Assembly: GCA_025594325.1 (NCBI GenBank)
Contig: JANHCV010000008.1
Span: 868,001-932,000 of the forward strand
DNA: 64,000 bases
Origin: Blastocladiella emersonii ATCC 22665
Lineage: Eukaryota; Fungi; Blastocladiomycota
Direction: 5' to 3'
Shown: in pieces, positions 3,024 to 62,088 of the stretch
How positions within the stretch are numbered: the first letter of the stretch is position 1
Layout: every line of letters starts with the position of its first letter
The notes under the pieces: model-generated
Databases searched by the model: none
Told to the model about the DNA's origin: nothing
Seen by the model: only the letters and a program-made list of their open reading frames with translations
Program-made: the position numbers and the translations under genes

Positions 3024-3323
3024 TCATGTGACCCGAAATGCGTCTCTTCAGTCCGCGTCTGCCGCGAGCGCACCCCGTGCACGTGCAAGGACCTCGGTTC
3101 AATGGTCGCAGTCCTCATCCGTGTTTACGACGAGGAGCTCGCTGTAACGGGACCGTCAGCGAGGGCCGAACCTTGCCAGGCACAGCTGAGTATGGAATCG
3201 TCCGCGACACTAGTTTTCGCAGTTCACAAACGTTTGATGTGGGTCCTGCCTGTGATCGAGATTTTCGAGCTCAGCAGACATCTCGGCGGCCTCGAGCTAC
3301 GGACGCGTTTCGATATCATGTGA
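3024..3323. promoter_or_regulatory. Divergent promoter region with two TCACATGA E-boxes
   Basis: tcatgtga at 3024-3031 and 3316-3323, each about 85-95 bp from the ATG of divergent members 2 and 3. Confidence 0.55.
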
Positions 3324-3418
3324 GGCCGGCGTGACCCCGAGAGGCGCAATTATGAGGCTGATGAGGCGAGTCGCGGTCTCGCCACGCTCCCCGTCCTCCA
3401 TCCGTCGACCAAAACGCA

Positions 3419-5035
3419 ATGAATCATTATGTAACTGGGCGCAATTCGCTCGTCGGGCCAGCCTCGAAACCCTGTGCCCGTGCGCCGGCGCTTGCTCAAC
3501 ATTTATCCCCGTCCACCGAACCGCTGCTGCCCTTGCCGGCAGTGGCCGTCGACCGCCGGATGCTTCAGGAAAAATTGCTGCTAGAGAAGATGGAGCTTCG
3601 CTTGCGGTCTATACACTCGGTCCTGCACGAGCGCATTTCGGGCGGGCGACGCAATGATTTTGTAGCTTCCACCTTTTCTAGCGTTTGCGGCCTTGCTTGC
3701 ACCGGCGAGCCTTCAAAGCCCCTTGATTGCTCGATTGCCGCGCATCCTGTCCTTATGGGGTCTTGTCCCGACCACGACAGCCGCCCTCACCGCGTTGACC
3801 CGTCGGCCGCCGCTCGTCCGCCTGGAGTCGAGAACGCGGCTCCGCTCGTAGTCGAGAACGTGGCTCCGCTCTGCGACCAATCTTTGTGCAGCGACGAGCC
3901 CGTAGCCCGTGGTCTTACGCGCACTCAATACCTCGAGCGCATATCGATAGACCAGCGGCAACCGTGCCCGTCCTCTCGATCGCAATCTCACGGAGAACTC
4001 CCTCAACTACCTAGCTCTCACTCCGAAGAGCTCTCATCGCACTTGAAGTGCGACGCTCCGGTCCAACGAATGTCCATGAAAGACTTCCGCGTCCTGTTCC
4101 GCCATATGCGCGACCACGGCCCGCTCCTCTGGCAGTTCGATACCTCGCGGCTAAGATCAACCGACGATCCACTCGATTTCATCGCGCGGCTTCGGCGGAT
4201 CGCGTTCGCTCGCGACTGCGCCCCGAGCCCAGTCTCGCTCGCGCTGGCGCTGCTCGCGTGCAGCTCGAACGTGCCGTGGCGCGTCTACCACCTGTACGCA
4301 GTCTTCCTCCACGAGGACACGCCTGACGACGAGGCCGAGCGCATTTTCTTGGACTCGATCGATCCCGCGGACCCTGCGCGTCGCGACTGGGCTGCGCGGT
4401 GGCTCATCGCCTCTCCGCCGGCGGGCTCGTTAGTCTCCGACTTTTACGCATACTTCCACGCGCTGCTCGACGAGGCCTCTTTGGGCCGCGCAGACGAGTT
4501 GGAGAAGACGTGGCCGATCAAACTAGTCTTTTCCGAGCGCGTGCTCCATCGCCTCAACACGAAATCCGCGGCCCTCACCAAGATTCTGTGGAACCAATCT
4601 GGCACCGTGGCGGGCATGAGTGCGGCGCTCAGCGACACCGTATTCCCCAAGGAGAAGCTCCGCCCAGATTTCGCGAATTGGCGACGAGGATGCTGGTTCT
4701 GCCACCGCTTCGCCAAACTGTGCCCGCCATCGGCTCGCGAGCATCCGGGCGACCTGTGCCCGCTTCTCATGCACCCGCGCCCGCTCGCCGAGGTGATTGT
4801 GGATGCTATGCGCCTGGTCGGGATCGATTGGCTCCAGTATAAGCGGGCCGCCAAGCGAGACGAGCTTGCCCTCGACCAGGTCCTCACTTGGCTCGAGGAA
4901 TTGACACGTTACACGCCTACGATTCAAGCGGCCAAGTCGGCTATCGCGGCACTGCTCCAGCTGGTGAAGCGGATTCAGGTCCGAATGCTGAGCATGGTGA
5001 TCCCGGTGCTCGACCGAGCGTGGATCGAGGAGTAA
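3419..5035 (+). CDS. Gag-derived family member 3 (intact; sister of member 1)
   Basis: LLLEKMELRLRSIHSVLHER; core nearly collinear with member 1; CWFC-x13-H-x4-C. Confidence 0.85.
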   Translation: MNHYVTGRNSLVGPASKPCARAPALAQHLSPSTEPLLPLPAVAVDRRMLQEKLLLEKMELRLRSIHSVLHERISGGRRNDFVASTFSSVCGLACTGEPSKPLDCSIAAHPVLMGSCPDHDSRPHRVDPSAAARPPGVENAAPLVVENVAPLCDQSLCSDEPVARGLTRTQYLERISIDQRQPCPSSRSQSHGELPQLPSSHSEELSSHLKCDAPVQRMSMKDFRVLFRHMRDHGPLLWQFDTSRLRSTDDPLDFIARLRRIAFARDCAPSPVSLALALLACSSNVPWRVYHLYAVFLHEDTPDDEAERIFLDSIDPADPARRDWAARWLIASPPAGSLVSDFYAYFHALLDEASLGRADELEKTWPIKLVFSERVLHRLNTKSAALTKILWNQSGTVAGMSAALSDTVFPKEKLRPDFANWRRGCWFCHRFAKLCPPSAREHPGDLCPLLMHPRPLAEVIVDAMRLVGIDWLQYKRAAKRDELALDQVLTWLEELTRYTPTIQAAKSAIAALLQLVKRIQVRMLSMVIPVLDRAWIEE

Positions 5036-5235
5036 TACACGTGGTTTTTGAGGATTCACGTATCGCGCTGATGATCACCTCGAAGCCCGCACACAGGCGT
5101 GTGAAACGCGTAGAGAAATCACGCCATGAAGTGGTGACGCGCGCGGCCTGACTCGTCGCCGCCAAACGCCACGCTGAACGCGGCGCCGACCTCTCGCACC
5201 CGCACCCCAGTGCTGACCGAGCAACCACCCAAAAC

Positions 5236-5436
5236 ATGGAGCAACTTGATGCAACGAATGAAACACACCCGACGCTGGCGGAGTCGCTCGCGATTGAGTG
5301 CGAATGCGCCGCAAAATGTTCGCCTGCGACTCGCCACCTGCAGCGCGTCGCGGTGAGCGGCGACCAGTCCGACATCCGCATCGTCGTGCGCAGCAAGACC
5401 TACGCGCTACATAGCGTCGTGCTTATTCAGAGCCCA
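5236..5436 (+). pseudogene. Possible BTB/POZ N-terminal fragment, truncated
   Basis: SDIRIVVRSKTYALHSVVLIQSP resembles the BTB start pattern sDv.l.v..k.f.lHk.vL..S; the sequence loses similarity after QSP. Confidence 0.4.
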
Positions 5437-10437: not shown

Positions 10438-10693
10438 TGGTGAAATTTGGTTTTGCGAGATCGGAAAGCGGTGAATAAACTTGAATAGCTTCTCATAACG
10501 TAAAAACAGGCAGCATATTGTTGCTGATTTTTGTAAGCTTAGGCACCGGGCGAAGCCTCACGTCGCTCATTTCCACGTGGCGGGCGCCACCGCCCTGTCT
10601 CAGGGGCACATCTCCCCGCGCGCGCCCCTGCTCCCTTGCGACCCCGACTGGTACATGTAGCACACGGAATTTTGAGCTTTGACTTTATGCAAC

Positions 10694-12192: not shown

Positions 12193-12724
12193 TTGTGATA
12201 TATACTAGCGAGACGCCTCGCGCAGACCGCGAATACCGATCGAGCGGGACTACGATGGGGCTCCTTCCTTGAGGTCGCTCTTGATGCGTAACCTTGTGTC
12301 GCTCATCTGCACGTGAGGCTCCTGCGGCAGCCTCAGATTTCAGAGTACAGGCCCCGGACAACGGAAGCGGCTGTTTCATAGTGGATCATTGAGTAGCGAC
12401 GATTCGCGTTCAGGAGACGGAGTGGCGCAGCGCGTGGTTGAGCCACTCACATGACCGCGATAGAACGGGGGACGCGCATGGTTGGTCGCTGGCGGAAAGG
12501 CAGGTATCCGTCCTCCACGACCACGGCCGCTGTAGCGAAAAGTAAGAGCAGAATCTGCGTGGACCCTGGATCCCTGACGGTGACTCCCGAGAGGAGCAAA
12601 CCGACGCGCCAGGCTATTTCTAGGCACGCCTTGTGTGGCGGGGGCGGGGGTGGGGGGCGGCGCGCTTTCAACGCAAGGGTCTCCGACTCTCCACTTCACG
12701 CGATCATGAACCCACCATTCTACC

Positions 12725-15090: not shown

Positions 15091-15434
15091 AAAAGGATGG
15101 CCCAATGCGCGAGATGTAGGCGGTCGTCGCGACGATGGTGGTGCGCGACGAGTAGGTTTCTTTTGGCTTTTGATGCGCCCGAATGGAGCACGGGGATATA
15201 CTTTGATTCATGACGTTCAAAAAGGTCGGGTCGCGCCACAACACGTGCGCGCTGAGGTGGTACATTTCTCGAACTAGCCCCGAGAAAGAATGGAGCGGCG
15301 GTGCGGTGGGAAGAAGGGGACGCGGTGGTCACGTCCGCGTGACGCGCCACAACGCCGAACTACCGAGCCCCGGCTCTCCCACTCTCTCATCCCTCACCCG
15401 GCCCTGTACGAACTCCCATGTAACTTGATGCAAC

Positions 15435-17423
15435 ATGAAGCTTGCTGCATTTGGACACGATCTTCATGCTTCCGCGGGCTCAACCACCAGCTCGGCCTCG
15501 AACAAAAATCGCTCACCCGACGAGCACGGGGACTTGGTTGACGCCGAGCCCGCCGCCTTGCTCAAGGCCATGAACTTACGAATGGAGATGATACGCCTCG
15601 CAGCTGCTTCACGTTCCTCGCCCGTTGCTGGGCACCCCGACTCGGATGGGCAATCGGGCCCGCTCTCGCGTTCTCGCCGCATGACTTCGCCTCCCCGGGT
15701 CCACCCAAGCCCGCACCTTTCGCCTGCGCTACGCGATCAAAGTCCTCCTTCGTGCGACCTCGCTGCCCGCGTGGACCGCGACGCGCCACACTTCCAGCGC
15801 ATGGGTTCAGACGAGCCTCTCGCGCGCGTCCGGCGAAGCCCGACGCTGTTTCTCGAGCGCCTGCGCGCAGTTGCGTCAGACGCACCGCTCGCCCAGATCC
15901 TCCTCGCGGCGCGGTCCCGCCTTCCACCCGACCTGTACACGGTCCTCGTTGCGCTTCTGCGCCCCACCTTGTCCGACACCGAGGCCGAGCACGCGTTCCA
16001 CTGCGCTGCGCTTCCTAACTGGAATTACCGGTGGGTCCGCAGGTGGCTCGCGTTCGGGCCGCGGATGCGCAGCACGATTGGCGCATTTTACGAAGAGTTT
16101 TGCACGCTGCTTGGCTGCGTAACGCAGGTCACGCGCACGGTTGAGCGCGAGTTCCACGTCAAGGAATTGTTTTTGCAGCGGATCGAAAGTCACCTTGCTT
16201 GGAATCCTGAGTCTGTGCGCCGGATTGTGCTTGACCCGAACGGGTCGCTGGGCGATATCGCCGTTGAGTACAACCGGATCCTGCACGCCGAGCGGACGGG
16301 GTTGACGGCAGTCAGCCTGCGCGCAGAGTCCAAGACCCGAACTCGAGCCCCTCTACCTGCACCGCGAAACCGTTCGCGTTCACGATCCCACTCGCACTCA
16401 AGATCTCGCCCACATCAGGGTTTGCGCACGCGTACTCGGTCTCGCTCGCGATCACTTTCGCGAAACCGTTCGCGTTCACCGACCCGCTCGCGCTCGAGGT
16501 CTCGCTCGCGAACAGTTTCACGGACGCCGCCTACGCCGCGAAACCGTTCGCGTTCACGATCCCACTCACACTCCAGATCTCGCCCACATCAGGGTTCGCG
16601 CACGCGCGCCTGGTCTCTCTCGCGATTACTTCCCCGAAACCGTTCGCGTTCACCGACCCGCTCTCGCTCGAGGTCTCGCTCGCGAACAGTTTCACGGACG
16701 CCGCCTACGCCGCGAAACCTTTCGCGTTCACGATCCCACTCGCACTCAAGATCTCGCTCGCATCGGGGTTTGCGCACGCGTACTCGGTCTCGCTCGCGAT
16801 CACATTCGCGAAACCGTTCGCGTTCACGGACCCGTTCGCGCTCGAGGGCTCGCTCGCGTCAGGTTTTGCGCACGCGCGCCCGGCCGCGCTCGCGGTCAAT
16901 CTCTAGAACACCTTCACGCACACCGGCTAGATTGCGCCCAAGAGCGCGATCAATCTCGCGCGCACGCGCCCGGTCGCGGTCACGCTCCCGCTCTCCTGTC
17001 CGCTGCGAGCCCCGATCCTGTCGGCTGTGCATTGACCTGAACATGAAACTCCTGCCGCGGGGCACCACCAGCCAGCTCCGCTCGCTCGGTGCGCACCCGA
17101 CCAACCACCCGACCACATCGTGCCCGCTTCTGGACCGCCCGTACATTCTTGCTCGGCAGTTTGTTTCGGCGGCGCGCTTGCTTGGGTTTGGCGATCCCGT
17201 ACCGCCTCCGCCGGACGCGGACGCGGAACTGCTAGACAAGGTGACGTGCGAGTGGATGTGGAAGCTCCGCAGGGCGCCGATCCCGCCCCGGACGGCGCTG
17301 GGCGACGCGCTGGAGCTCACGTGGTGCCGCAGCATGGTCGGTGTCCTCTTCACGGTCCAGCAGCCGCGGCGGGCGCAGGTCCTGCGTGATCTATGGGGCG
17401 AGGTCGCGAGGCGTGTCAAGTAG
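15435..17423 (+). CDS. Gag-derived member 7 (intact, long RS tract)
   Basis: LLKAMNLRMEMIR; core; about 200-aa RS region; CRLC-x25-H-x4-C; tail WCRSMV. Confidence 0.85.
   Translation: MKLAAFGHDLHASAGSTTSSASNKNRSPDEHGDLVDAEPAALLKAMNLRMEMIRLAAASRSSPVAGHPDSDGQSGPLSRSRRMTSPPRVHPSPHLSPALRDQSPPSCDLAARVDRDAPHFQRMGSDEPLARVRRSPTLFLERLRAVASDAPLAQILLAARSRLPPDLYTVLVALLRPTLSDTEAEHAFHCAALPNWNYRWVRRWLAFGPRMRSTIGAFYEEFCTLLGCVTQVTRTVEREFHVKELFLQRIESHLAWNPESVRRIVLDPNGSLGDIAVEYNRILHAERTGLTAVSLRAESKTRTRAPLPAPRNRSRSRSHSHSRSRPHQGLRTRTRSRSRSLSRNRSRSPTRSRSRSRSRTVSRTPPTPRNRSRSRSHSHSRSRPHQGSRTRAWSLSRLLPRNRSRSPTRSRSRSRSRTVSRTPPTPRNLSRSRSHSHSRSRSHRGLRTRTRSRSRSHSRNRSRSRTRSRSRARSRQVLRTRARPRSRSISRTPSRTPARLRPRARSISRARARSRSRSRSPVRCEPRSCRLCIDLNMKLLPRGTTSQLRSLGAHPTNHPTTSCPLLDRPYILARQFVSAARLLGFGDPVPPPPDADAELLDKVTCEWMWKLRRAPIPPRTALGDALELTWCRSMVGVLFTVQQPRRAQVLRDLWGEVARRVK
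16363..16880 (+). repeat. Three 174-bp (58-codon) RS-coding units
   Basis: Unit start cgcgaaacc at 16363, 16537 and 16711; frame preserved. Confidence 0.85.
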
Positions 17424-17879
17424 GTGGCTGCGCCAAGTTCGTTGCGCTCTCTGATAAGGATGTAATTGAAGTTTTTATTTGAGCCGTGACCGCGGCGGAG
17501 CCATGCGAGGAAAGTATGGAGCCAATCGAAGATAGTTGCTCGTGAGTTGCTCACCGCCTTGGTATCCACCGAGATTCCGGGGTCGCGGAAAGCTGTCACC
17601 GATGCACGGGTCCGTAGACTCACGCGGTCGCGCAGAAACGTGGTCGAGGTTGAACGTTTGGGGTTCTCGAAACTGCACGCGACGTCCGAGCAGCATTGCG
17701 GTTGAGAGTCGTCCAGCATCATCATACACTCATCATTCTTGTGCGTGACCCGACGCGGAGGCATCATGTCGCGACGCGGCGGTCACGTCCGCGTGACGCG
17801 TGAAGCGTGACGCGAACCTGAGACCAGGGGTTCTGGTGAGACGCCCAGCCGCTTCAGCTCGCCCTCTCCCCACCTCGCC

Positions 17880-19448
17880 ATGATCGGAACGAAAGACTAT
17901 GTAACTCTATGCAAAATGCAACTTGCTGCATCTGGATGCAATCTTTATGCTTCCACATCTGGATGCAATCTTTATGCTTCCACCCACACGGCCGTCGAGT
18001 TGACTTTGAACGAAAGTTCCGACATGGGCAGCGACTTGGTCGACGCTGAGCGCGCCACCTTGCTCGAGACCATGAACATGCGAATGCAGTTGATTCGCGT
18101 TGCGCTTGCATCGCGCTGCTCGGGCTTTGCAAACTCACCAGAATCGACCCACGCGCAACTCGGGGCACCTAGAGACAAATCGCACCGGCGTCAACGCACG
18201 CCATCGAGTCGCGACCGCTCTGCTTCGCTCCCTGGAAACCAATCCAGCCCACAACCATCCCATGCGCTGCCTCGCCTGCCTTCCTGTGAACTTGCAACCT
18301 GTGTGGACCGGGGCGCGCCGCACTTCCAGCCTCTTGGTCGAGAAGAGCCTCTGTCGCGCGTAAGACGGAACGCGACTTCGTTTCTCAAGCACCTACGCAC
18401 TTTGGCCCCCGATACGGCCTTGGCGCCTCACATCCTCGCCGCGCGGTCCCGCTTGCCGCCGGACCTGTACGCGGTCTGCGTCGCGCTGCTCCGCCCGTCA
18501 ATGTCCGACACCGAGGCCGAGCACGCGTTTATGCGCGCGGTGCTACCCGATTGGAACCGCCGGTGGGTCCGCGAGTGGCTCGCGCTCGCACCGCAGTCGC
18601 GCGCCGCGATCGGCACCTTCTACGCCGAGTTCCGCATGAAGCTCGCTCAGGTAACTTCCATTACGGCCGAGGTCGAGCGCGAGCTTCACCTCAAGCTGCT
18701 GTTCGTGCAGCGAATCGAGGACCGACTCGCGTGGACCGCCGAGTCGGTGCGCCAAATCGTGGATGACCCGCACGGGTCGGTGAGCGATATTGCCTTCGAG
18801 TACAGCCGGATTCTGCGCGCGGAGCGCGGCGTGGCTATGAGAATTTCGACAGTCGTCACTTGCGCCCCGACGGCCCCGCGAACTTTGGCTCCGGCGCATA
18901 CAATGCGGACTCGATCGCGTTCAAACTCGAAGGCAAGTTTGCAAACTCGAGCCAGGTCACACTCTCGCTCGAAGTCGAGGGCACGTTCGCGCTCCCGACC
19001 GCGTTCTCAATCCCCTGCGCGCCGCGTGCTCCAACATTGCCTGCTGTGCGACGACCCGGACATTGACCCCCTGCCAAGCGACTGCGACGGGTCCGGCCAG
19101 TTTTGGAAGCGCCCCGGTGACCATTCGACCAAGACCTGCCCGCGCCTTGACCGACCCCGCGATCTCGCTGGGACATTCGTGGCTGCAGCGCGCGCGTTTG
19201 ATCTCGGCGATCCCGTGGCCCCACCGCCTAGCGCTGACGCCGAGGTCCTGAACAAGGCGATGGACGAGTGGAAGTGGAAACTTGTCAGGGCGCGGATCCC
19301 GCCCGGTACGACGTCAAGCAATGCGCAGAAGCTTAAGTGGTGCCGCAGCATGGTCAAGGTGCTGCTCGCGATCCACCAGCCGCGTCGGATGCAGGTCTTG
19401 CGCGACGTGTGGGACGAGGTCGCGTGGCGGGTTGGGCGGGGGGTATAG
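17880..19448 (+). CDS. Gag-derived member 8 (intact; sister of member 7)
   Basis: LLETMNMRMQLIRVAL; core; RS linker; CLLC-x24-H-x4-C; in-frame 27-bp duplication at 17929-17982. Confidence 0.85.
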   Translation: MIGTKDYVTLCKMQLAASGCNLYASTSGCNLYASTHTAVELTLNESSDMGSDLVDAERATLLETMNMRMQLIRVALASRCSGFANSPESTHAQLGAPRDKSHRRQRTPSSRDRSASLPGNQSSPQPSHALPRLPSCELATCVDRGAPHFQPLGREEPLSRVRRNATSFLKHLRTLAPDTALAPHILAARSRLPPDLYAVCVALLRPSMSDTEAEHAFMRAVLPDWNRRWVREWLALAPQSRAAIGTFYAEFRMKLAQVTSITAEVERELHLKLLFVQRIEDRLAWTAESVRQIVDDPHGSVSDIAFEYSRILRAERGVAMRISTVVTCAPTAPRTLAPAHTMRTRSRSNSKASLQTRARSHSRSKSRARSRSRPRSQSPARRVLQHCLLCDDPDIDPLPSDCDGSGQFWKRPGDHSTKTCPRLDRPRDLAGTFVAAARAFDLGDPVAPPPSADAEVLNKAMDEWKWKLVRARIPPGTTSSNAQKLKWCRSMVKVLLAIHQPRRMQVLRDVWDEVAWRVGRGV

Positions 19449-19687
19449 GGGGTTTGGGCAGGTTCAAAGCTCGCGAGTTGGGCTGCCACTAAAGCCATGC
19501 ATTGACTCGTCTTCTGATTTATACAACTTCACTTCTTGCTCGGTGACTTGGTTGTGACGCGACGCGACGCGACGCGACGAAGTGCGAGACAAACGCGGCG
19601 GCCGTCACGTGCGTGTTTGGAGACAGTTTGAAGCAAGCCTTTGAGGACCACCACCCCCGCTCCCTCGCAGACATTGAATGAAACCGG

Positions 19688-21199
19688 ATGAATGATACGG
19701 ATTGCGAGACTTGCTGCATTTGCCCTGCCCAGGTTTGCTCAGTACACGCGCGCAGTTCGCGTGTTGCGGCGATGGACCACGCACATGTGCAGCGGGAGCA
19801 GCGTGCACTCCTCGAGGTGATGTACTGTCGTATCGAGCTGATCCATGCTTCACTTCGTGCTCGTCTTGCGCCCTTGGACCCGGTCCAGTCCGAGCGCGCC
19901 GCGCACTTGGCAACTGAGTTGTTCGCTGCCGAAGCGGCACTTGAGCAAGTTCGCGCTGCTGCTACGGCTCAACCGCTGAACGACGACTGCGCCTCCCCCG
20001 CTGCCGTGCCTCAACGTGCTTCACCGTTGGAACGACGCGACCTTGCCACCGTCGTTAAAAATGCCGATATTCGCTTCCCACAATCGTGCGATTCGTTTTC
20101 AGAGGATTCCGGCTCTGAGATTGAGCACCTGCTCGCCGCTCTGACCCGTGCCGGTGTACCATCGGGCCGGCTCGCCGAAGCCCTGCTCCTGACCCGACCG
20201 CACCTCCCTGACGCCATCTTCCGCGCGTTTGCCATCACGCTGCGCCCGACCTTGTCCGACACAAACGCACGCGAATCAGTGCGTGGCCCGTTCCAACCTC
20301 AGCGGCCCGCTTGGCTTACGCGGTGGCTTGACTTCCGCGCAGACGGCAGCATGCACCAAGAGGAAGTCCTGCGCGCAGCGCAGTCAATCGTACGCGACGC
20401 AAACGGGCGGCAGCAAGAGGGTGCGCGGCTTGCGCATGTCAAGGAGCTTTTCGTCGAGCGGTTTGCTGACGTGGATCGCGCTGACGTGTTGGACCTGGTC
20501 GCCGATCCAGCGCGGACGCTCGAGGACGTGTTGCTGGCATGCTTTCGCGTTGCTTGGCGGAGCGACACGGTTACGACGCGCCATGCTGACGAGGCATTCC
20601 CCGAACCAGCTCCGCGGCGCAGCGCGAGACGGAGGGACCGCACCTCGCCACCGCAGCCGGTCGCTGTTTCCGCCGCAGCCGATTCGCAATCCTCGGCCAG
20701 CAACCTCGCATTCCAGCGCCGCTCCCCGCTCGCCGGCCTGACTTGCGTCTACTGCATCGCGTACATGACTGTGGCCCCGCTCCCGGATAGGCTACGGCTC
20801 ACTTTTCCGCACCGCGAAACGAAGTGCAACCGCATCACCCGCACGCACAACGTGGCCATCGTCATCTACCAAGCGCTGCGCTCGCTGCCTGCGGACCGGC
20901 GCTTCCGCTTCACGGCGCCGGCCCTGCGTGCCCCGCGGGCCGAGATCATGGCCCGGTTCAGCGAGCTCGAGGCGCATCTCGCGCGCGAGTCGACCACGCG
21001 CACGCAGTGGCTCGGGCACGCCGCCGTGGTCGCGATCGCGCGGCTCCCGCAGGATCGGCGCGCAGCGAACGCGGTCAGCGCCATGGTCGTGGTCGAGGGC
21101 ATGCTGCAGCTGTCTGACGAAACGTCGGTTGAAGAGGCGATCAAGCACGGAATGGGGTGGCTTGTGCGGCAGCGGGCGATAATGGGATATAGGAGATGA
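19688..21199 (+). CDS. Gag-derived member 9 (intact, divergent subfamily)
   Basis: LLEVMYCRIELIHASLRAR; GVPSGRLAEALL...LRPTLSD...PAWLTRWL...HVKELFVERF; CVYC-x18-H-x4-C. Confidence 0.8.
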   Translation: MNDTDCETCCICPAQVCSVHARSSRVAAMDHAHVQREQRALLEVMYCRIELIHASLRARLAPLDPVQSERAAHLATELFAAEAALEQVRAAATAQPLNDDCASPAAVPQRASPLERRDLATVVKNADIRFPQSCDSFSEDSGSEIEHLLAALTRAGVPSGRLAEALLLTRPHLPDAIFRAFAITLRPTLSDTNARESVRGPFQPQRPAWLTRWLDFRADGSMHQEEVLRAAQSIVRDANGRQQEGARLAHVKELFVERFADVDRADVLDLVADPARTLEDVLLACFRVAWRSDTVTTRHADEAFPEPAPRRSARRRDRTSPPQPVAVSAAADSQSSASNLAFQRRSPLAGLTCVYCIAYMTVAPLPDRLRLTFPHRETKCNRITRTHNVAIVIYQALRSLPADRRFRFTAPALRAPRAEIMARFSELEAHLARESTTRTQWLGHAAVVAIARLPQDRRAANAVSAMVVVEGMLQLSDETSVEEAIKHGMGWLVRQRAIMGYRR

Positions 21200-21500
21200 T
21201 TCGAACGCAGAGAGCATGGACGTTGCACATCCTGGCCTTCGTTCGCTCATAGTAAAGATATGCCCTTGACGCGCTGGCAAGGCGAAGACAAGAAGAGTAC
21301 GCCAATCGGCGGACGTGCGCCGCGCACGCCCACATCGCTCAACGAGCGCTAACAGAGCATGTACTTCGAGACATGGCGTGACCGGAGCCAGCGGATCCTC
21401 GCGTGGGCCTTGGTCATGCAGTCGGGCCGACCGGCAGCCTGAGCGGTCCCGGCGACGCGACAAGGCGAGACGCGACAAGGCGCGACGCGATGCGCCCGCG

Positions 21501-21588
21501 TCACATGACGCGTCGCGAGGCGGCGCTCCCTTCTCCTCTTCAACACCGTCACCTCCCATGTAACTGCGCATGAACACTCAATGCAACT
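21501..21588 (+). promoter_or_regulatory. Example family 5' module (E-box plus ATGYAACT)
   Basis: tcacatga 21501-08, atgtaact 21558-65, atgcaact 21581-88; similar modules occur at most members. Confidence 0.55.
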
Positions 21589-23399: not shown

Positions 23400-23751
23400 G
23401 CATACATATTCGCGGTTCTGCACGACAGAGCCCATTAGGTGTGTTCACCGAGCATTCAGCGTGGTCTTCTGTCTGGATCTGACGCTGAGGACAAGCGTTC
23501 TCTGTGGTGTGCGGGCGCGCCCCGGCCGGGTTCGGCCTGGCGCCGAGGCCGTTTGATGCCGTGAATACAACGACTGTTGTACACGCTTAGATTTCAGGGC
23601 ACCGCGGCTCATCCGCCTCAGCGCACGTCGCGTCTCGCGCCTCGTCTCCAGCATATCACATGATGTGGCGCTGGGGCAGAGCGGGGTTGGTTCGCACGCT
23701 CCCAAGCTCCAACGCAGCACTCTCTTACGCACTCCATCGATGCTAAATCCA

Positions 23752-24849: not shown

Positions 24850-25045
24850 TGAAGGCCCAGGGGACCGAGACTAGGAACGGCTCCATATAAGACTCGGTGT
24901 ATACTTCCGCCGTTAGGCTTCCCTGAGCAAATGGGGAGCGCGAGGGCAAATCGGAACAACAGCGAGGGGCGGGAGCGGCGGTGCCGCTGCACGCACTGTG
25001 CGTGTTGATTGAGGTCACTTGGCATCACCTGATCTGGTCGCAACA
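24850..25045 (-). repeat. 3' LTR (196 bp)
   Basis: Matches 31160-31225 joined to 36812-36941, with 5 substitutions by eye. Confidence 0.95.
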
Positions 25046-25057
25046 TCACCCCCCTCC
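25046..25057 (-). other. Polypurine tract
   Basis: GGAGGGGGGTGA directly before the TG of the 3' LTR. Confidence 0.85.
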
Positions 25058-34934: not shown

Positions 34935-34952
34935 GCAGAAGCTGCGAGCGAT

Positions 34953-42496: not shown

Positions 42497-42748
42497 CGTA
42501 CAGCAGCTGTGCAAAACCATCGGTAAGGTAAGTTCTTCTCGCGCACTCGCTACACGCGAGCTTCTTCAATCGACACCGCGCTGTTGTTCGCTGCGTGAGG
42601 GCTCTATCGCGTTGGCGGTGACTCGAGGGATCGCTTGCTCCGCGCCGCTCATTTCCACGTGGCGCACCGACCTGCCGGTCGCTCGCTCCTGCTCGCGGCC
42701 CCGTATCACATGAAGCACATGAAATTATCCCCAGCGACTTGATACAAC

Positions 42749-44302: not shown

Positions 44303-45479
44303 GAAATACAAAGCGCGTATTTTATTAGCAAGCCCAGATGAGCACACGACTTCCCGCAAATCGGTATCGCTCGGGTTGCGTAGTTACGCGCGAGTCTGAG
44401 TGTGCAAACCTTGCTCGCGATCTCGGGCAGGGGGGCTAAGTGGGGGTGAGCAGGCTAGCCAAACCGTTGTCCCCGACCTCTGCTGCAGGTCACACGTGAG
44501 CTGACCCGCTCGCTGTGCTCCAGCAGCTCGGGTCACTCTGCCTCGTGGCGGCACGGGCCTTTCACCTCACCCACGTGTCCCCCAGCGCCCCCACCCTTCA
44601 GTTGTCGATTTCTCGCACTCTTTCTCTCTGAAATACGTTCGCCCTAACACGTTGATCATCTCGTGGAACTCACGTCCCGCTACGGCTCGACCCCGCCGAC
44701 CAGACGCCGCGTGGCCACCAGCTGTCCGCCAACCTCGCCGCCCCCGCTCTCGCGCAGCCTTCTCCGCTCGATCTTGAGCTCGTCGCCCTCCCCACTCGCA
44801 CCTACCGACGTGCAGGCGGGGCTCGCGGCCCTGCTGGTGCCCGTCCACGCTACAGACCTGCCCCACCCTCCCTTCTGCCCTCGCCGACTCTGCCCCGCTC
44901 CTTGGGCTTCGCCCCTGATCCGCTCGCCGCTCAGCTCGCCGTTCGCCGTTCGCCGGTCGATCGAACGCCTGAGCGCGCAGCCGCTACTTGCATGGTCAGC
45001 CGGCGCTTGGGGCTCTTGAACTTGTGAGCCTCGTCGTGCGCCGCGTCGTCCAGCCCACGCGCATGCACCGATCTGACCGCCATCCTCGTCTCTTCGCTCC
45101 CCTCACGTCTCTCCCTCCCCGGATCCGCTCCCGCCGCGCCAGCTTGCTTTGGTCGCGCTTGAGCATCCGAGAAAGTTTGCTGTGATGCAGGAGCTGTGGA
45201 CTCATGTTGTATCCCACGGTGCCAGCCAATCGCGATGGTTGCTCTGGCGCGTGAGTGCAGCGGGCGATGGTGGAGCTTTATTTGCGGGTGCGTTTCCCCT
45301 CAGTGCAATACAACACACTTGATTATTGCAGTCCGATCGGCGCGAAGGGGCGGCGGGGTGGGTCGTGATGTTCACGCCCGCGTGACTGCCCGTGGCGACC
45401 CAAGCCAAGGAGTGGCTGACGCGTTCCGGAGCGGAGCGACTTGCCCTTTCCTCTCCTCGTACGCGTGATATGTCATCAA

Positions 45480-46856
45480 ATGGAGGCCTCCGGGGCACAC
45501 ACTTGCTGCACCTGTATCGTCGCATGCGTGGGGCCCTGTCCCGTGCACGCGAGCAGCGCGCTAGACTTGCAACTTCCCTCGCGTGAAAGCGCTGCTGCGC
45601 TGATCAGCGCGATGAACAGCCAGCTCGACTTGATCCAGACTACCTTGCGATATCGCATCGGCTCAACTCATCCCCCCTCCTTTATGCAAACTTCGCTCGA
45701 TCTCTCAGCGAGTTCTCGCGAACGTCCGCCTGTCGATGACTTGGTGCAGCGGGTCAAGTCCGCTCAGTTCCACTTCACGGTCCGGGACCCGCTGAACGAG
45801 TCGGTCGGCTTGGAGGTCGACGCACTACTTGCCTCGCTCCTCGCCGCTGGAATTCCTTCCGGCCGTCTCGCCGAAGTCCTTCTCGCCACCCGCGACCGCG
45901 TTCCTCGCGACATTTACCGCGCGTTCGCAATCACGCTGCGCCCCGACATGTCCGACTCGGCCGCGCGAGTGGCAGTCAAAGCCGTCTTTTCGTCGCCGCG
46001 TCCCGCGTGGCTCACTTCGTGGCTTACGTTCGTTGTCAAGCGGCACATGGACGGGCACGTCGTTGTCAAATCCGCGCTCGCAATCGTACGGGACGCGTGC
46101 GGAGACCGATCCGGCGGCACGCGGCTCGCGCACATCAAGGCGCTGTTTGCGGACCGCATCGTTGGTGTGAACGCCGATGCGCTCCGCGACGAGATTGCAG
46201 ACGCGCGGTGCACGCTAAGCGAACTGCTCGCGAAGGGAATCCACCTGGCGCAGGACGCGGGCGAGTCCCGGCCGCGCCAAATTGACGCGCGTGATCCGAT
46301 TTCACGCAGCGTGACGCCGGTCCGCGGCGCGTCACGCTCCTCTCGAATCATCACGTGCGGCTTCTGCCGCGAGCTGCTGGGCGTACCGCACCGCAAGGGT
46401 AAGCTGCCAAAGGCGGACGGACACACGGCCGACACGTGCGACCGCGTCATCAACCCGACGAACGCGGCCGTCACGGTGCACCTGGCCCTTCGCACGTTCC
46501 CGCACGCGACTCACTCGCGGGTCTCTGCGCCGCCCCGCGTCGGCTCGCTCGAGGCGATCATCCGTTGCGAAGACGACATGCTCGAGGACGTTCGCGTGCT
46601 CGCGCGCGAAATGAAACCGTACTGCGACGACAGTAACGCGGGGCGGCTTGGGTACGCGGTCCTGCGCGAGCTCCAGACCGTCCAGCCCGCCAAAGTGCGT
46701 GCGATGGCCGTCTTCAAGATGATCACGGTGCTCCACCGGATGGACCGCGCGCCAGCCGGCCAATCAGTTGAACTCACCCGCGATGACGCCGTGCGGCACT
46801 TGCGCGATGTCGAGTCGCGGATTGGGATTGGATACCGTCAACTGAAAGGAAAGTAA
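45480..46856 (+). CDS. Gag-derived member 14 (intact; sister of member 9)
   Basis: LISAMNSQLDLIQTTLRYR; GIPSGRLAEVLL; HIKALFADRI; CGFC-x18-H-x4-C. Confidence 0.8.
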   Translation: MEASGAHTCCTCIVACVGPCPVHASSALDLQLPSRESAAALISAMNSQLDLIQTTLRYRIGSTHPPSFMQTSLDLSASSRERPPVDDLVQRVKSAQFHFTVRDPLNESVGLEVDALLASLLAAGIPSGRLAEVLLATRDRVPRDIYRAFAITLRPDMSDSAARVAVKAVFSSPRPAWLTSWLTFVVKRHMDGHVVVKSALAIVRDACGDRSGGTRLAHIKALFADRIVGVNADALRDEIADARCTLSELLAKGIHLAQDAGESRPRQIDARDPISRSVTPVRGASRSSRIITCGFCRELLGVPHRKGKLPKADGHTADTCDRVINPTNAAVTVHLALRTFPHATHSRVSAPPRVGSLEAIIRCEDDMLEDVRVLAREMKPYCDDSNAGRLGYAVLRELQTVQPAKVRAMAVFKMITVLHRMDRAPAGQSVELTRDDAVRHLRDVESRIGIGYRQLKGK

Positions 46857-47117
46857 TAGAGCGAGTTGTTGACAAGTTGCCGCAGCAACAGTTCATGTGA
46901 GCCGCGTGTGCAATGGTGAGTGTTTTAGTCACGGCTGTCCAAGGTTAATTAGATCGTGAAGCCGCAAGCTACACTATCAAAACGGGTTGCATCAGGCACA
47001 CAGGGAGAATGGACCAGCAGCGCCGTTCGCAGCAGAGTGGCGCAACGCGTTCCTACGAGTGGCCGCCGCCCGCGCAACGGCCGCTCCCCGCTCAATACAC
47101 ATGTCTCGCCCCCTGCT

Positions 47118-48614
47118 ATGAATACGCCGAGTGGCACTCCATGCAACCTATTTCTCGCTCTATCCCCAACGGATTTCGACCGCGACCTGGCGTCTGCCGT
47201 GGCGGCGTTCGATCGTGCCGCGGTCGCGGATGAACTTGAGACCGCATCCAGCAGGGAGCTTGCCGTTCTCGAGCAGGGAGCGCTTTGCAACATCCTTTCT
47301 TGCCGTCTTGACTTGCTTCGGGCTGCGTTGCGCGCGCGCGTCACACCTGAAGCCGTTTTGGCGGAGCCAATCGTTGGAGCGTCCCATGCCTTGTTCAACA
47401 CCCAATCGACATGGACGGCGATCGCCAAGCTTATTGTTACCAAACCGACTATCGAATTTTGTACGGATCTGACTGTATCCGCCCTCCCTGTGGTGGAATC
47501 ACTCGTGCAGGGACCGGCTCTGCTTTCAGCTGCGGCCGAGCCGCTCGCGACCGAACTCGAACTCTCCGCATCATCGTCCGAGCTGGATTATCACGAACCG
47601 GTCTTGGCCACCACGGTGTCGGTGTACTCGGCAGCTCCCAATCCAACGCAACCGGCAACTGCACCAGACCTTACGTCCCGCCCCGAGGCAAAACCCAAAC
47701 TGGCGCTTGCGCTGAATCACACCCTGCTTTCCGCGTGCGCGACCCTCGGACCGTACATTCGCGCCATCGAGCTCGGCCACGAAACGGACGACTTCGACTA
47801 CGACGCGATTTGCCGTGCTGCCGAGTCCATGGTTGAGCTTCTCTCAATCGGAGTCGAGCCAGGCCGCCTCGCGCACGCGTTGATCGACTCGCACGACCGC
47901 GTCCCGTCCAGCATCTACCGCGCCTACGCGATCGTGCTTTTGCCCGAGATGCCCGACGACGCAGCGCGTGCTGCCGTGCTATCCGTGTTCGGTTCACTGA
48001 GGCCGGCGTGGGTCGCGAACTGGATCAGGTATGCCGTGAAACCGAAACCGGACCGGCAGTTCAAGCTCCAGGGACTGTCGCATTTTGCGCTGCGGATTCT
48101 GGTCAACTCGGATTCGGGGTTCGCGACCCGCTCTGCATGCGTGCACATCAAGTCCCTTTTCATCGACCGCTTTGCTTGGGTTGATCAGTCAGCGCTCGCC
48201 CAGCGGATTAACGATCCGGAGTGCAAGCTCAAGGAGCTGTTCAAGGCTGCGTTTGGCTTGTACGAACGGACCGCTGCTCCCTTTGACCAGCAACCGAAGT
48301 CGCCCCTTGCTGTTTCCGCTGGCCCTTCTGTTGCCGCCGACCGTGTGCCGCTTACCTCCAAGCCTGTCATCAAAACACCGCCAAGGAAGCTATTGACGCG
48401 AAAGTCGATCCAGATGCCGCTTGCGCGTGATGAGCCGCACGTGGAGCAACCCGTCTCGATTTTAGCTCGCGGACTGCTGCTTCCTTCGATTGTCGCAAGG
48501 ACGTGGCCCACCCAGCTTTGGGCCATTCTGCTTCCGCGGGCCGCCCGCCGCCCAAAATCCTTGAACTGGGTGAGATCGAATGCTCAACCCTTGCCGCTCA
48601 GACAATTGATGTGA
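47118..48614 (+). CDS. Gag-derived member 15 (core, no knuckle; overlaps member 16)
   Basis: MNTPSGTPCN; LCNILSCRLDLLRAALRAR; GVEPGRLAHAL...PAWVANWIRY...HIKSLFIDRF. Confidence 0.75.
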   Translation: MNTPSGTPCNLFLALSPTDFDRDLASAVAAFDRAAVADELETASSRELAVLEQGALCNILSCRLDLLRAALRARVTPEAVLAEPIVGASHALFNTQSTWTAIAKLIVTKPTIEFCTDLTVSALPVVESLVQGPALLSAAAEPLATELELSASSSELDYHEPVLATTVSVYSAAPNPTQPATAPDLTSRPEAKPKLALALNHTLLSACATLGPYIRAIELGHETDDFDYDAICRAAESMVELLSIGVEPGRLAHALIDSHDRVPSSIYRAYAIVLLPEMPDDAARAAVLSVFGSLRPAWVANWIRYAVKPKPDRQFKLQGLSHFALRILVNSDSGFATRSACVHIKSLFIDRFAWVDQSALAQRINDPECKLKELFKAAFGLYERTAAPFDQQPKSPLAVSAGPSVAADRVPLTSKPVIKTPPRKLLTRKSIQMPLARDEPHVEQPVSILARGLLLPSIVARTWPTQLWAILLPRAARRPKSLNWVRSNAQPLPLRQLM

Positions 48615-50990: not shown

Positions 50991-51225
50991 TTTTTTCGAG
51001 CAGCGGTCGAGCGGCAGAGGCCCTGTCAACCAGTCACATGAGCCCCGGTGACGTCGGCGCACCTGCGTTTCGCTCGCGCCGATCGACGCCACCGGCTCGC
51101 CCTCACTTGAGCGCCCGCCCGCCACCCCGCGCAGCCCGCTCTTCCATCCGCCCTCACGAGCACGACACCCTGGCGATCCGCCACCCGACCACCACCCGAT
51201 CCCTGCCCATCCTCCTCACCATGGC

Positions 51226-60065: not shown

Positions 60066-60659
60066 GTGCAGTCTCTCATCTTCGACCCATGCATTACTCT
60101 CGAGTCATTGGCTGCCTCGTTTGCCGGCGGCGCCGCCCCGCTCCAATCGCCCTCCCCACCTGCGAAAAGAAACGCGAAGGAGTGCGCGTTTTGCAAGAGG
60201 GTGGTGTGGCTTCGCAAAGCGTTCACATCACACTTGACGGACGCATGTCGGCACATCAGCACCATCCGTCTGCACGCGCGCGTTGTCGCGGACGCGGTCA
60301 AGAGTGCTGCGCTTACGATCCCGAAATTATCGGGCTCCCCGCACACCCAAGCCGAGCCGCTCACGGCGCTCATGTTGCAGCAGCTGCGTGAAGCGCCGCT
60401 CCCAGACGGCGCGCTGGATTGGGCCGGTTCCACCATCTCCAAAGCGTGCAGTCTGCTCTTTGCACTGATCTCGCTCGCGTACGAGCTTGGAAACGGTGCA
60501 ATGCGGGACCTGTGGAAGCTCGTCGAGTTGATTAGCGGGACGAGTAGCTGTTTTGATTCCCGAAAGGGGCCCAAAAAGAACGTTGATGTTTTTTTTGATG
60601 TGGTTCCAAAGTGTTGCAATTCCGACATTAGTAAGCTGAGGCGGCCCGCTGACTGCTAG
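60066..60659 (+). pseudogene. Gag-derived member 16, 3' part
   Basis: VQSLIFDPCITLESLAASF...CAFC-x12-H-x4-C...MRDLWKLVE. Confidence 0.85.
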
Positions 60660-60840
60660 TACAGCACACAACCCAGTTGCGCACGAGACTAGAGATGTGC
60701 CGAGCGGTCGCGTTGCGCCACACACGTGAGCGATGGGGGCAGTTTTCCCGAAGCGGCCAACGGTTCGGCTCGCGGCTTGCGCGTCACATCTCACGCTGCT
60801 CCCTACTCGTGTGCGCGTCTGACCGCACGCATGTCACTTT

Positions 60841-61863
60841 ATGCAACTTAGAATGCGAGCTCAATGCAATCTGCCGGTCGAACGTTCCTCATCCTTGGGC
60901 CACGGCCAGAACCTGCCCCTTGTCGCGCCGCGCGACCTCGCAGCGATGCCGCCGCCACAGGACCAGTCGCTTGAGGCGCAAATCCTCAACTCGATGAATC
61001 TTCGCTTGCACCAGGTCCATTCGGTGCTTCACCATCGTATTGCATGCTTCGCTGAAACCCACACTGAGTGGAACGTGCGTCGCGGCGATTCTGATCCGCC
61101 ACTCTGCCACCTAGCAGATCTCTATCCAGCCGATGGGGCACGCCGGCTTCTACTCTCGTACAGCCCGGCACCCTTGTCGACTCTTGCACTGGCCGAATGT
61201 CCCGCACCTCGTTTGCCACCTGCTGGCTCGAGCGGACCCAGCTCCCGCGACGACGCGTACGAGCTGATTGACACATCCGGTCATTCTCTCTTCTACCAAG
61301 TCTCTGCCCGCGTACCCAGCCTTCGCACCACCGGTCAGCAGCGCGTTCCAGTCGTTTCAGACCCGCGCGACTTCCTCGCCGCCCTGCGTGGGGTCGCGCC
61401 GCACGAATCGCTCTCGCGCCTTCTCATTGCGGCACGGACCAAGGTGACGTGGATGCAGTTCTGCACCTATGCCGTTTTCCTGCGCAAGTCGACGCCCGAC
61501 CGCGAGGCCGAGCACCTCTTCATTAGCGTTGTCGAAAACACGTGGCGGCCCGCTTGGACGGCACGCTGGAGCAAGCTTCGGCTCAGATCGCGCTCAGCCA
61601 AGGACATGGATCGGTTCTACAAGGCGTTCTGCGCGCTAGTTGGCGAAGCGGTCGGGCTCACGCACGAAATGATGCACGAGGAGCACGTGAAGCGCGTGTT
61701 CAATATCACCGTGTCCCGGTCCGTGGGATAGAGCCCCATTACCGTCCAGAACCTCATTCCGGACCCGAGGGCGACGCTTCTCGACGTCTGCAACGATTAC
61801 ATTTGGCTTGCCAAGCCCGGACCAAGTACAACCAAGCATGCTCGAATGCGGCTGTTGAGATGA
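60841..61863 (+). pseudogene. Gag-derived member 17; TAG at the conserved Trp (sister of member 12)
   Basis: ILNSMNLRLHQVHSVLHHR; core; SVG*SPITVQNLIPDPRATLLDV continues in frame to a stop at 61863. Confidence 0.8.
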
Positions 61864-62088
61864 GCGGGCTTGTGTGTGCGACTGTTGCTTCAATACACCA
61901 CGTTTGCTCGTCTGTTGTGCGCGTGGATCAGAGAGCCTGGCCTGCCTGGGTGCCGGCTTCGGCGGCCACGCGCCGTCCACCTCCCTGCGACCTCACGTGA
62001 GGAGGCGCGCAAGCCGAACTCACGACGGCGCGTCAGGCCGACCTGACCCCACTCTCCCCTCGGACCGTGCCCCCTGGCAGCTATACCA

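What the first reader, a model, noticed from the sequence alone, without database searches (positions are those of the whole stretch)
3024..62000. Shared TCACRTGA E-box upstream of the array genes
TCACRTGA (either strand) occurs at 3024, 3316, 12447, 21501, 23656, 42706, 46893 and 61993. Each lies about 35-280 bp before a family ATG, including the antisense member. CACGTG variants occur at about 10574, 19606 and 60723. The flanking intergenic DNA is otherwise not alignable. RTCACRTG is the Cbf1/CDEI site and TCATGTGA the MITF/TFE M-box. This suggests the genes are under host bHLH control instead of LTR promoters.
Basis: partly seen in the sequence, partly recalled or inferred. Interest (0 to 1): 0.75.

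Follow-up and report, generated by a model that had tools for sequence, protein, structure and literature searches.

The report
Shared E-box upstream of Gag-like genes
A short DNA word (TCACATGA/TCACGTGA) really does sit about 100 bases upstream of most members of a tandem array of retrotransposon-Gag-like genes in the water mould-like fungus Blastocladiella emersonii, far more often than chance allows, and is most likely an ordinary transcription-factor binding site that these genes share.

Summary
Eight of the 10 lie 43-278 bp upstream of a family start codon.

- **Enrichment:** the motif is in 8 of 15 upstream regions, against 0.2 expected (0/2000 shuffles). It is the top-ranked 6-, 7- and 8-mer there.
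- **Wider set:** counting CACGTG and a newly seen palindrome, TCACG-YCCG-CGTGA, 14 of 15 promoters carry an element. All 9 intact genes do.
- **Position:** 12 of the 15 have an element within -140..-40 of the start codon.
- **Selection:** synonymous sites between paralogues are saturated (dS 0.9-3.3) and the promoters are otherwise unalignable. Retention of the motif therefore implies selection.

The window is from Blastocladiella emersonii ATCC 22665. The array genes are homologues of the Gag of a resident Ty3/gypsy element, but have no pol and no LTRs.

The site fits a T-flanked class-B E-box, as bound by Cbf1/MITF-type bHLH-ZIP factors. Binding, the transcription start, co-expression and family specificity could not be tested. 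Whether the motif came from the host or from an ancestral LTR also cannot be decided.

This is a new instance of a known kind of element, of moderate interest.

The parts
3024..3031 (-). TCACATGA, 91 bp upstream of the antisense family member (ATG 2940, - strand), sense orientation
3316..3323 (-). TCACATGA (reads TCATGTGA on the + strand), 103 bp upstream of ATG 3419. Part of a 25-nt block also found at 32809-32833
12447..12454 (+). TCACATGA, 278 bp upstream of ATG 12725 (frameshifted member)
21501..21508 (+). TCACATGA, 69 bp upstream of ATG 21570
23656..23663 (+). TCACATGA, 96 bp upstream of ATG 23752 (member later split by a retrotransposon insertion)
42706..42713 (+). TCACATGA, 43 bp upstream of ATG 42749. 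A second CACATGA lies 9 bp downstream and a CACGTG at 42656 (-93)
46893..46900 (-). TCACATGA (TCATGTGA on the + strand), 225 bp upstream of ATG 47118
61993..62000 (.). Palindromic TCACGTGA, 96 bp upstream of ATG 62089
32812..32819 (+). It lies inside a 5.6-kb insertion nested in the retrotransposon's 5' LTR, with no family gene downstream
51034..51041 (+).
10574..10579 (.). CACGTG, 120 bp upstream of ATG 10694. Sits in a 19-nt block (CGCTCATTTCCACGTGGCG) identical to the one at 42646-42664
19606..19611 (.). gtCACGTGcg, 82 bp upstream of ATG 19688
60723..60728 (.). CACGTGa, 118 bp upstream of ATG 60841
15329..15342 (.). Palindrome TCACGTCCGCGTGA, 106 bp upstream of ATG 15435. Centre of the only conserved upstream block shared with the paralogue at 17916
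17783..17796 (.). Palindrome TCACGTCCGCGTGA, 133 bp upstream of ATG 17916
45372..45385 (.). Palindrome TCACGCCCGCGTGA, 108 bp upstream of ATG 45480, in a distant paralogue
3419..5035 (+). Intact Gag-like family gene (538 aa)
2041..2940 (-). Antisense, partial family member (profile positions 28-333)
15435..23399 (+). Four consecutive intact family genes: 15435-17423, 17916-19448, 19688-21199 and 21570-23399
42749..48614 (+). Three intact family genes: 42749-44302, 45480-46856 and 47118-48614
62089..63525 (+). Intact family gene (478 aa)
24850..36941 (-). Ty3/gypsy LTR retrotransposon inserted into a family member. The gag-pol ORF is 25838-31072 and the 3' LTR is 24850-25045. The 5' LTR is split into 31160-31225 and 36810-36941 by a nested 5.6-kb insertion. 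Its Gag is the family's homologue

Best explanation
TCACRTGA is a cis-regulatory element under selection in the promoters of a tandemly amplified, Ty3/gypsy-Gag-derived gene family of Blastocladiella emersonii. The plain CACGTG sites, and probably the split palindrome TCACG-YCCG-CGTGA, act as its equivalents.

The element sits about 70-130 bp upstream of the start codon. Most likely it is bound by a host bHLH-ZIP dimer of the Cbf1/MITF type, which prefers a T 5' of the CAC half-site. That factor would open or activate these promoters, so that the family is expressed from its own short promoters and not from LTRs.

**Shown:** the motif's existence, its enrichment, its positional clustering, its retention against saturated neutral divergence, the Gag ancestry of the genes, and the absence of LTRs.

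**Inferred:** the class of binding protein, the direction of its effect (activation) and co-regulation.
For: - **Enrichment:** the motif is in 8 of 15 upstream regions against 0.22 expected (0/2000 shuffles). CACRTG is in 12 of 15 against 4.2. Any of the three element types is in 14 of 15.
- **Rank:** it is the top-ranked k-mer at k = 6, 7 and 8, and the family-wise shuffle test gives 0/1000.
- **Position:** 12 of 15 promoters have an element within -140..-40, against 1.6 expected. All 9 intact genes carry one.
- **Promoter side:** the divergent pair 2940(-)/3419(+) has two copies in an intergenic region with no 3' ends.
- **Selection:** paralogue dS is 0.9-3.3 and dN/dS is 0.26-0.58, and the promoters are unalignable. 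The few conserved blocks between the closest paralogues are centred on CACGTG or the palindrome.
- **Flanks:** the T and A flanks are exact at all 10 TCACRTGA sites, whereas CACATG sites inside coding sequence lack them.
- **Pseudogene decay:** in the frameshifted pseudogene 10694, the position aligned to the TCACATGA of 42749 has decayed to GTACATGTA.
- **Literature:** Cbf1 prefers TCACGTG. A Pho4 (bHLH) network functions in B. emersonii. A Cbf1-like progenitor, from which MITF descends, predates the fungus-animal split (PMC8256859).
Against: - No transcript, TSS or binding data could be consulted.
- No bHLH gene of this genome was examined.
- Two of the 10 sites (32812, 51034) are not upstream of a family member, so the element may not be family-specific.
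- Nine of the 10 sites are the asymmetric CACATG with perfectly fixed flanks, and 5-6 of the 7 oriented promoter sites point the same way as the gene. That is not expected of a symmetric homodimer site, although the bias is not significant.
- The CACGTG copies at 10574 and 42656 have C/G flanks, the Pho4/Myc-type preference and not the Cbf1 type.
- The palindrome's half-sites are 6 bp too far apart for a single bHLH dimer.
- Three degenerate members have no proximal element or a far one (12725 at -278; 14497 and the fragment at 40295 none). The intact 47118 has TCATGTGA at -225 and a plain CACATG at -20.
Confidence: 0.6

Rival explanations
1. The element is a general promoter or chromatin-opening site used by many B. 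emersonii genes, as Cbf1 sites are for a general regulatory factor in yeast. It would then not mark a family-specific regulon, and the family shares it only because it is a common promoter component. This overlaps with the best explanation on mechanism and differs on specificity.
For: - Two TCACATGA sites lie outside family promoters.
- Non-family ORFs at 5236 and 7828 have CACGTG at -198 and CACATGA at the start codon respectively.
- No other promoters of this genome could be sampled.
Against: Within the window the motif is almost absent outside family promoters: 0.17 per 15 random windows. However, the window holds few if any ordinary genes.
Confidence: 0.25
2. The motif is a relic of the U3 promoter of the ancestral retrotransposon and was copied with each tandem duplication. 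On this view the element is functional but of LTR origin, not host origin.
For: - The genes are Gag homologues.
- Tandem duplication would copy promoter and gene together.
- The motif lies at a similar distance from the start codon in most copies.
Against: - The resident element's LTR has no CACRTG, only CAGGTG.
- No LTR-like repeats or termini flank any array gene.
- The family is only about 17% identical to that Gag, so the founder element is unknown.
Confidence: 0.2
3. The conserved word acts at the RNA level or is read by a non-bHLH protein. For example, its ATG could start a regulatory upstream ORF in the 5' leader, or a homeodomain-type factor could read TCATGT.
For: - The motif contains an ATG.
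- 5-6 of the 7 oriented promoter sites are in the sense direction.
- TCATGTGA contains a start-stop pair.
Against: - The upstream ORFs from the motif's ATG are 10-111 codons long, with no shared peptide and no fixed relation to the main ATG.
- The equivalent positions in other promoters hold CACGTG, TCACGTGA or the palindrome, none of which has an ATG.
- Two promoter sites are in the reverse orientation.
Confidence: 0.1
4. The pattern is chance or residual sequence identity from recent duplication, with no function.
For: The whole-window count alone is only marginally enriched, with 2 of 100 shuffles reaching it.
Against: - The family-wise test over all 8-mers gives 0/1000 and the placement tests give 0/2000.
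- dS is saturated and the promoters are unalignable, so identity by descent cannot explain an exact 8-mer in seven or eight promoters.
Confidence: 0.03

Closest known systems
Cbf1 site / CDEI (RTCACRTG) of budding yeast
   Same: The core and the 5' T are identical, and both CACGTG and CACATG versions are accepted. The site is promoter-proximal, as it is in yeast MET genes. Cbf1's preference for TCACGTG is documented (PMC8256859).
   Different: The site is not in a centromere: there is no AT-rich CDEII or CDEIII next to it, and there are many copies in 64 kb. The preceding base is R at only 6 of 10 sites. The organism is a blastoclad fungus in which Cbf1 has not been studied.
MiT/TFE M-box (TCATGTGA) and CLEAR element (GTCACGTGAC) of animals
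   Same: Nine sites are exactly the M-box core and one is the CLEAR core. T/A flanks are required in both cases. According to PMC8256859, the MITF subfamily descends from a Cbf1-like progenitor older than the fungus-animal split.
   Different: MiT/TFE proteins proper are an animal family. The full 10-bp CLEAR palindrome is not present. The target genes here are Gag-like genes, not lysosomal or pigment genes.
Ino2/Ino4 ICRE (core TTCACATG) and Pho4 sites (CACGTGG/CACGTTT) of yeast
   Same: These are bHLH heterodimer or homodimer sites with a CACATG or CACGTG core in the promoters of a co-regulated gene set. The copies at 10574 and 42656 (tcCACGTGgc) have Pho4-type flanks, and a Pho4 network exists in B. 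emersonii (cited in PMC8256859).
   Different: The ICRE has a longer consensus that is not seen here. Nothing links these genes to phospholipid or phosphate metabolism.
[quoted passage not shown]
   Same: The genes are Gag homologues without pol or LTRs. They have intact ORFs, dN/dS below 1, and promoters of their own.
   Different: The three known fungal cases are single-copy and derive from Ty1/copia or Bel-Pao (PMC8321522). This family is Ty3/gypsy-related, multi-copy and tandem, and is known from one contig of one species. Co-option criteria such as orthologues in other species are not met.

Membership tests
Class-B E-box (bHLH/bHLH-ZIP binding site) | CANNTG hexamer with a CACGTG or CACATG core | tested here: met
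   There are 10 TCACRTGA sites. CACRTG is in 12 of 15 family promoters against 4.2 expected.
Class-B E-box (bHLH/bHLH-ZIP binding site) | T at -4 and A at +4 (Cbf1/USF/MiT-TFE flank preference) | tested here: met
   The flanks are exact at all 10 TCACRTGA sites. Among the CACGTG variants they are one-sided at 19606 and 60723 and absent at 10574 and 42656.
Class-B E-box (bHLH/bHLH-ZIP binding site) | Located in promoters upstream of the transcription start | tested here: inconclusive
   The sites lie 43-278 bp upstream of start codons and in a divergent intergenic region. No TSS data were available.
Class-B E-box (bHLH/bHLH-ZIP binding site) | Bound by a bHLH protein of the organism | not testable with these tools
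   The only support is from the literature: a Pho4 network in B. emersonii and a Cbf1-like progenitor in the fungal ancestor (PMC8256859).
Point-centromere CDEI | RTCACRTG followed by a 78-86-bp, more than 90% AT CDEII and then a CDEIII | tested here: not met
   The flanks of every site are GC-rich and no 2-kb window falls below 55% GC. There are ten sites in 64 kb, each tied to a gene start.
LTR (U3) promoter | The gene is flanked by direct long terminal repeats with TG...CA ends | tested here: not met
   No direct repeats flank any array gene. Upstream regions do not align with each other or with the resident LTR.
Retrotransposon Gag homologue | Sequence homology to the Gag of an LTR retrotransposon, including the Cys-His motif | tested here: met
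   hhalign gives probability 83-84%, E 8e-6 over 148 columns, against E 0.17 for the best of 25 shuffles. The alignment is colinear, with invariant K..F and CX2C...H...C. There is no Pfam gag hit and no significant fold match.
Co-opted (domesticated) gag gene | Loss of pol and LTRs with an intact ORF under purifying selection | tested here: met
   Intergenic gaps are 250-450 bp with no pol. dN/dS is 0.26-0.58.
Co-opted (domesticated) gag gene | Orthologues at a syntenic site in other species or families | tested here: not met
   A profile search of 1.84 billion representatives found 25 hits. The 19 named ones I looked up are all B. emersonii ATCC 22665 on one contig, and one further hit is a spurious TPR protein.
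Co-opted (domesticated) gag gene | Expression as a host gene | not testable with these tools
   No transcript data could be reached. The GenBank models exist but are truncated.

The most novel reading that the evidence does not exclude
A domain of several hundred kb on one B. emersonii chromosome holds dozens of tandem, fast-evolving Ty3/gypsy-Gag-derived genes. These genes would form a single bHLH-driven regulon with a fixed promoter layout: an E-box or palindrome about 110 bp upstream of a start-proximal ATGYAAC element. That would be a lineage-specific, amplified 'Arc-like' capsid-protein system switched on together, for instance at one stage of the zoospore life cycle. It would be the first multi-copy, gypsy-derived gag co-option in fungi.
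Probability: 0.2. Interest if true: 0.65.

Novelty: new member of a known kind. Interest (0 to 1): 0.4.

Why it matters
If the element is functional, it gives a concrete handle on how retroelement-derived genes obtain and keep host-readable promoters. Here an 8-bp T-flanked E-box is the only sequence retained across promoters whose neutral sites are saturated.

It also points to an unstudied, species-restricted, tandemly amplified Gag-like family in an early-diverging fungus. For fungi, the literature I read lists only three gag co-options, all single-copy.

It adds a candidate target set for Cbf1/MITF-type bHLH factors near the base of the fungal tree. This bears on whether the T-flank preference is ancestral to fungi and animals.

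As a cis-element it is otherwise ordinary.

Tried and rejected
**Identifying the family**
- Pfam scans of the family and of about 30 other ORFs found only the retrotransposon pol domains, plus weak FNIP and Plavaka hits.
- The word-based protein search with the 42749 gene product found nothing.
- The PDB sequence search with the family profile found nothing.
- Foldseek with an AlphaFold model (pLDDT 74.7) against PDB and BFVD gave no significant match. A few retroviral Gag rows appeared at E 0.09-0.26, which I treat as inconclusive.

**Other scans of the window**
- Rfam and tRNA scans found nothing.
- A literature search for the bare word TCACATGA returned only primer sequences.

**Hypotheses tested and dropped**
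- The uORF hypothesis was not supported.
- A CDEI/centromere reading was rejected on composition and copy number.
- TR-GAG-type non-autonomous elements were rejected because no terminal repeats flank the genes.

**Could not be done**
Together with collections that hold only viruses, metagenomes, prokaryotes, phages, plasmids and E. coli, this meant no other part of the B. emersonii genome could be fetched.
- The pol search gave only distant chromovirus-like relatives (44% identity or less) and did not identify the host.

**Operators' rules**
- The window is not human.
- No spliced model was used.


Full report
**1. The observation**

Nine sites are TCACATGA. The site at 61993 is the palindrome TCACGTGA.

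Over the whole window the count is only marginally high: 11 matches against 3.8 +/- 2.6, with 2 of 100 shuffles reaching 11. CACGTG is not enriched overall (25 against 28.6). The signal is in where the sites lie.

**2. The genes**

The window is 62% G+C. It carries a tandem array of ORFs of about 500 aa that align with each other at about 25% identity. They have no Pfam match.

An HMM of ten members, run against the six-frame translation, finds about 20 members or fragments. Nearly all are on the + strand. One partial antisense member lies at 2041-2940.

I fixed 15 start codons from the alignment and the sequence: 2940(-), 3419, 10694, 12725, 14497, 15435, 17916, 19688, 21570, 23752, 42749, 45480, 47118, 60841 and 62089.

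- Nine of these genes are intact.
- The others are frameshifted (10694, 12725), fragments (14497, 60841, 2940) or split by a transposon (23752).

**3. Statistics**

- TCACATGA is the most over-represented 8-mer in the fifteen 300-bp upstream regions. It is in 7 regions with 9 copies in the whole window (nominal p 1e-6). Its sub-words top the 7-mer and 6-mer lists.
- In 1000 dinucleotide shuffles of those regions, no 8-mer was shared by more than 6 regions (mean 4.05), against 7 observed.

| Element | Promoters with it (of 15) | Expected from shuffles | Shuffles reaching it |
|---|---|---|---|
| TCACRTGA | 8 | 0.22 | 0/2000 |
| CACRTG | 12 | 4.2 | 0/2000 |
| CACGTG | 7 | 2.1 | 6/2000 |

Random real 300-bp windows give 0.17 for TCACRTGA.

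**4. A third form of the element**

Two intact genes have no CACRTG in the 300 bp upstream (17916, 45480). A third (15435) has only a distal one, at -193. All three carry a 14-nt palindrome, TCACG-YCCG-CGTGA.

- It occurs only three times in the window, at 15329, 17783 and 45372.
- The three copies lie 106, 133 and 108 bp upstream of those ATGs.
- About 0.07 occurrences are expected from base composition; that estimate is my own arithmetic.

Counting all three forms, 14 of 15 promoters have an element and 12 of 15 have one within -140..-40, against 1.6 expected (0/2000). All nine intact genes have one.

**5. Evidence for selection and against shared descent**

- Pairwise dS between paralogues is 0.9-3.3, which is saturated. 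dN/dS is 0.26-0.58.
- The upstream regions do not align, apart from the overlapping divergent pair 2940(-)/3419(+) and short blocks.
- In the closest pair, 15435/17916, the conserved blocks are GACGCGG.GGTCACGTCCGCGTGACGCG and the start-proximal ATGTAACT..ATGCAA.
- In 10694/42749 the conserved block is CGCTCATTTCCACGTGGCG.
- The TCACATGA of the intact 42749 aligns with a decayed GTACATGTA in the frameshifted 10694.
- The T and A flanks are exact at every TCACRTGA site, but not at CACATG sites inside coding sequence.
- The divergent intergenic region 2941-3418 has no 3' ends and holds two copies. This argues for a promoter role and against a terminator role.

**6. Organism and family**

A profile search of 1.84 billion representative proteins found only 25 relatives. 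The 19 named ones I looked up are hypothetical proteins of Blastocladiella emersonii ATCC 22665. All lie on one 1,801,506-bp contig, with locus tags H9P43_006651 to 006885.

Several relatives are 100% identical to parts of window ORFs, and one is flagged as encoded by the window. So the window is from that contig. The deposited gene models are shorter than the ORFs.

The genome paper reports 10,031 genes and 21 contigs and does not mention this family in the passages I searched (PMC9730499).

**7. The family is Gag-like**

A Ty3/gypsy element lies at 24850-36941. Its gag-pol ORF is 25838-31072 on the - strand and carries RVP, RVT, RNase H and integrase domains. It is inserted into one family member, leaving 23752-24849 on one side and 36944-37533 on the other.

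- The family profile matches the Gag part of that polyprotein with hhalign probability 83-84% and E 8e-6 over 148 columns. The best of 25 shuffled controls scores E 0.17.
- A MAFFT alignment is colinear over the whole length. K..F and CX2C...H...C are invariant in Gag and family alike.
- The AlphaFold model is all-helical, with confident cores. It found no significant structural neighbour, so the Gag assignment rests on sequence.
- No array gene is followed by pol or flanked by repeats.
- The resident LTR (about 197 bp, TGTTGCGACC...GGCCTTCA) has CAGGTG but no CACRTG.

**8. Mechanism**

The sequence is a T-flanked class-B E-box.

- Cbf1 prefers TCACGTG and Pho4 prefers non-T flanks.
- A Pho4 network is reported to function in B. 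emersonii.
- A Cbf1-like progenitor, from which animal MITF descends, predates the fungus-animal split. All three points are from PMC8256859.
- From established knowledge, TCATGTGA is the MITF M-box and RTCACRTG is yeast CDEI.

The best-supported reading is a bHLH-ZIP site that activates or opens these promoters. The class of binding protein, the TSS and co-expression are inferences.

Several observations cut against the simple version of this reading:

- The asymmetric core has fixed flanks, and its orientation is mildly biased towards the gene's direction.
- 10574 and 42656 have Pho4-type flanks.
- The palindrome's half-sites are too far apart for a single dimer.
- Two sites lie outside family promoters.

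A uORF role for the motif's ATG is not supported. The upstream ORFs are 10-111 codons long with no shared peptide, and the equivalent elements in other promoters lack an ATG.

'Host instead of LTR' cannot be decided. The motif may have come from the founder element's U3.

**9. Novelty**

As a cis-element this is a new instance of a well-known kind.

The context is less ordinary. The literature I read lists three gag co-options in fungi, all single-copy and from copia or Bel-Pao elements (PMC8321522). This family is gypsy-related, tandem and multi-copy.

It is known from one species only, so it does not meet the usual co-option criterion of orthologues in other species.

**10. Limits**

The genome-wide background, further family promoters and transcript evidence were therefore out of reach.
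- No referred steps arose.

Noticed in passing
window 3429, 10687, 12745, 14520, 15418, 15428, 17899, 17916, 17936, 21558, 21581, 23763, 47141, 60841, 60864, 62100 (+ strand): A second shared element, ATG[CT]AA[CT] (often CTCC-ATGCAAC-TT), clusters at -17..+23 of family start codons. Of 27 + strand sites, 17 lie within 60 bp of a start (16 of them at -17..+23). All four ATGTAAC in the window are at -17..+10 of a start. The A before TGC-AAC is kept whatever the codon (CCA, CAA, GGA or TTA), so the constraint looks like a nucleotide-level one. In six genes the E-box or palindrome centre lies 103.5-115.5 bp upstream of it.
   Followed up: partly
window 5236-5796 and 7828-8286 (+): Two ORFs with no detectable protein similarity to the family start with the same nucleotide hallmark, ATGAAn...ATGCAAC. 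A degenerate member begins at about 40295 with the same element. This suggests a shared 5' module on unrelated coding sequences.
   Followed up: partly
window 3302-3326 (-) and 32809-32833 (+): A 25-nt block, gcgTCACATGATATCGAAACGCGTC (24 of 25 identical), joins the E-box to an ACGCGT (MluI-box-like) word. It occurs in two otherwise unrelated places.
   Followed up: partly
window 23752-24849 + 36944-37533; 24850-36941: One family member is split by a Ty3/gypsy element with possible target-site copies CACTC/CGCTC. The element's 5' LTR is itself split (31160-31225 / 36810-36941) by a 5.6-kb insertion of unknown nature. That insertion carries 48- and 93-nt tandem repeats at 33485-34460.
   Followed up: partly
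window 59266-59946 and 63319-64000; also 42215-42496: There is a roughly 680-nt perfect (100%) inverted repeat covering the 3' end of gene 62089-63525 and its downstream DNA. A third copy at 42215-42496 is 97-98% identical. This is either a recent inverted duplication or an assembly artefact.
   Followed up: no
window 13440-13832, 18501-21124, 45948-46853, 48803-49030: The deposited GenBank protein models for this region are truncated or chimeric relative to the ORFs. Many begin at family-profile position 224, and one joins parts of two neighbouring genes.
   Followed up: partly
window 16356-16984 (in gene 15435-17423) and 21570-23399: Long Arg-Ser dipeptide-rich inserts, encoded partly by 174-nt tandem repeats, sit in the linker between the family's two conserved domains. 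The homologous linker in the retrotransposon Gag is Gln/Pro-rich.
   Followed up: no
whole window; relatives P0078-P0102: Every named relative found among 1.84 billion representative proteins lies on the same 1.8-Mb contig of B. emersonii, spread over about 235 locus tags. The family therefore appears to be confined to one chromosomal domain of one species.
   Followed up: partly
window 38321-39538 (+) and 56142-57386 (-): There is a weak FNIP-repeat hit (E 8e-5) and a very weak Plavaka-transposase hit (E 0.044, below threshold). These were the only other family signals in the unannotated parts of the window.
   Followed up: no
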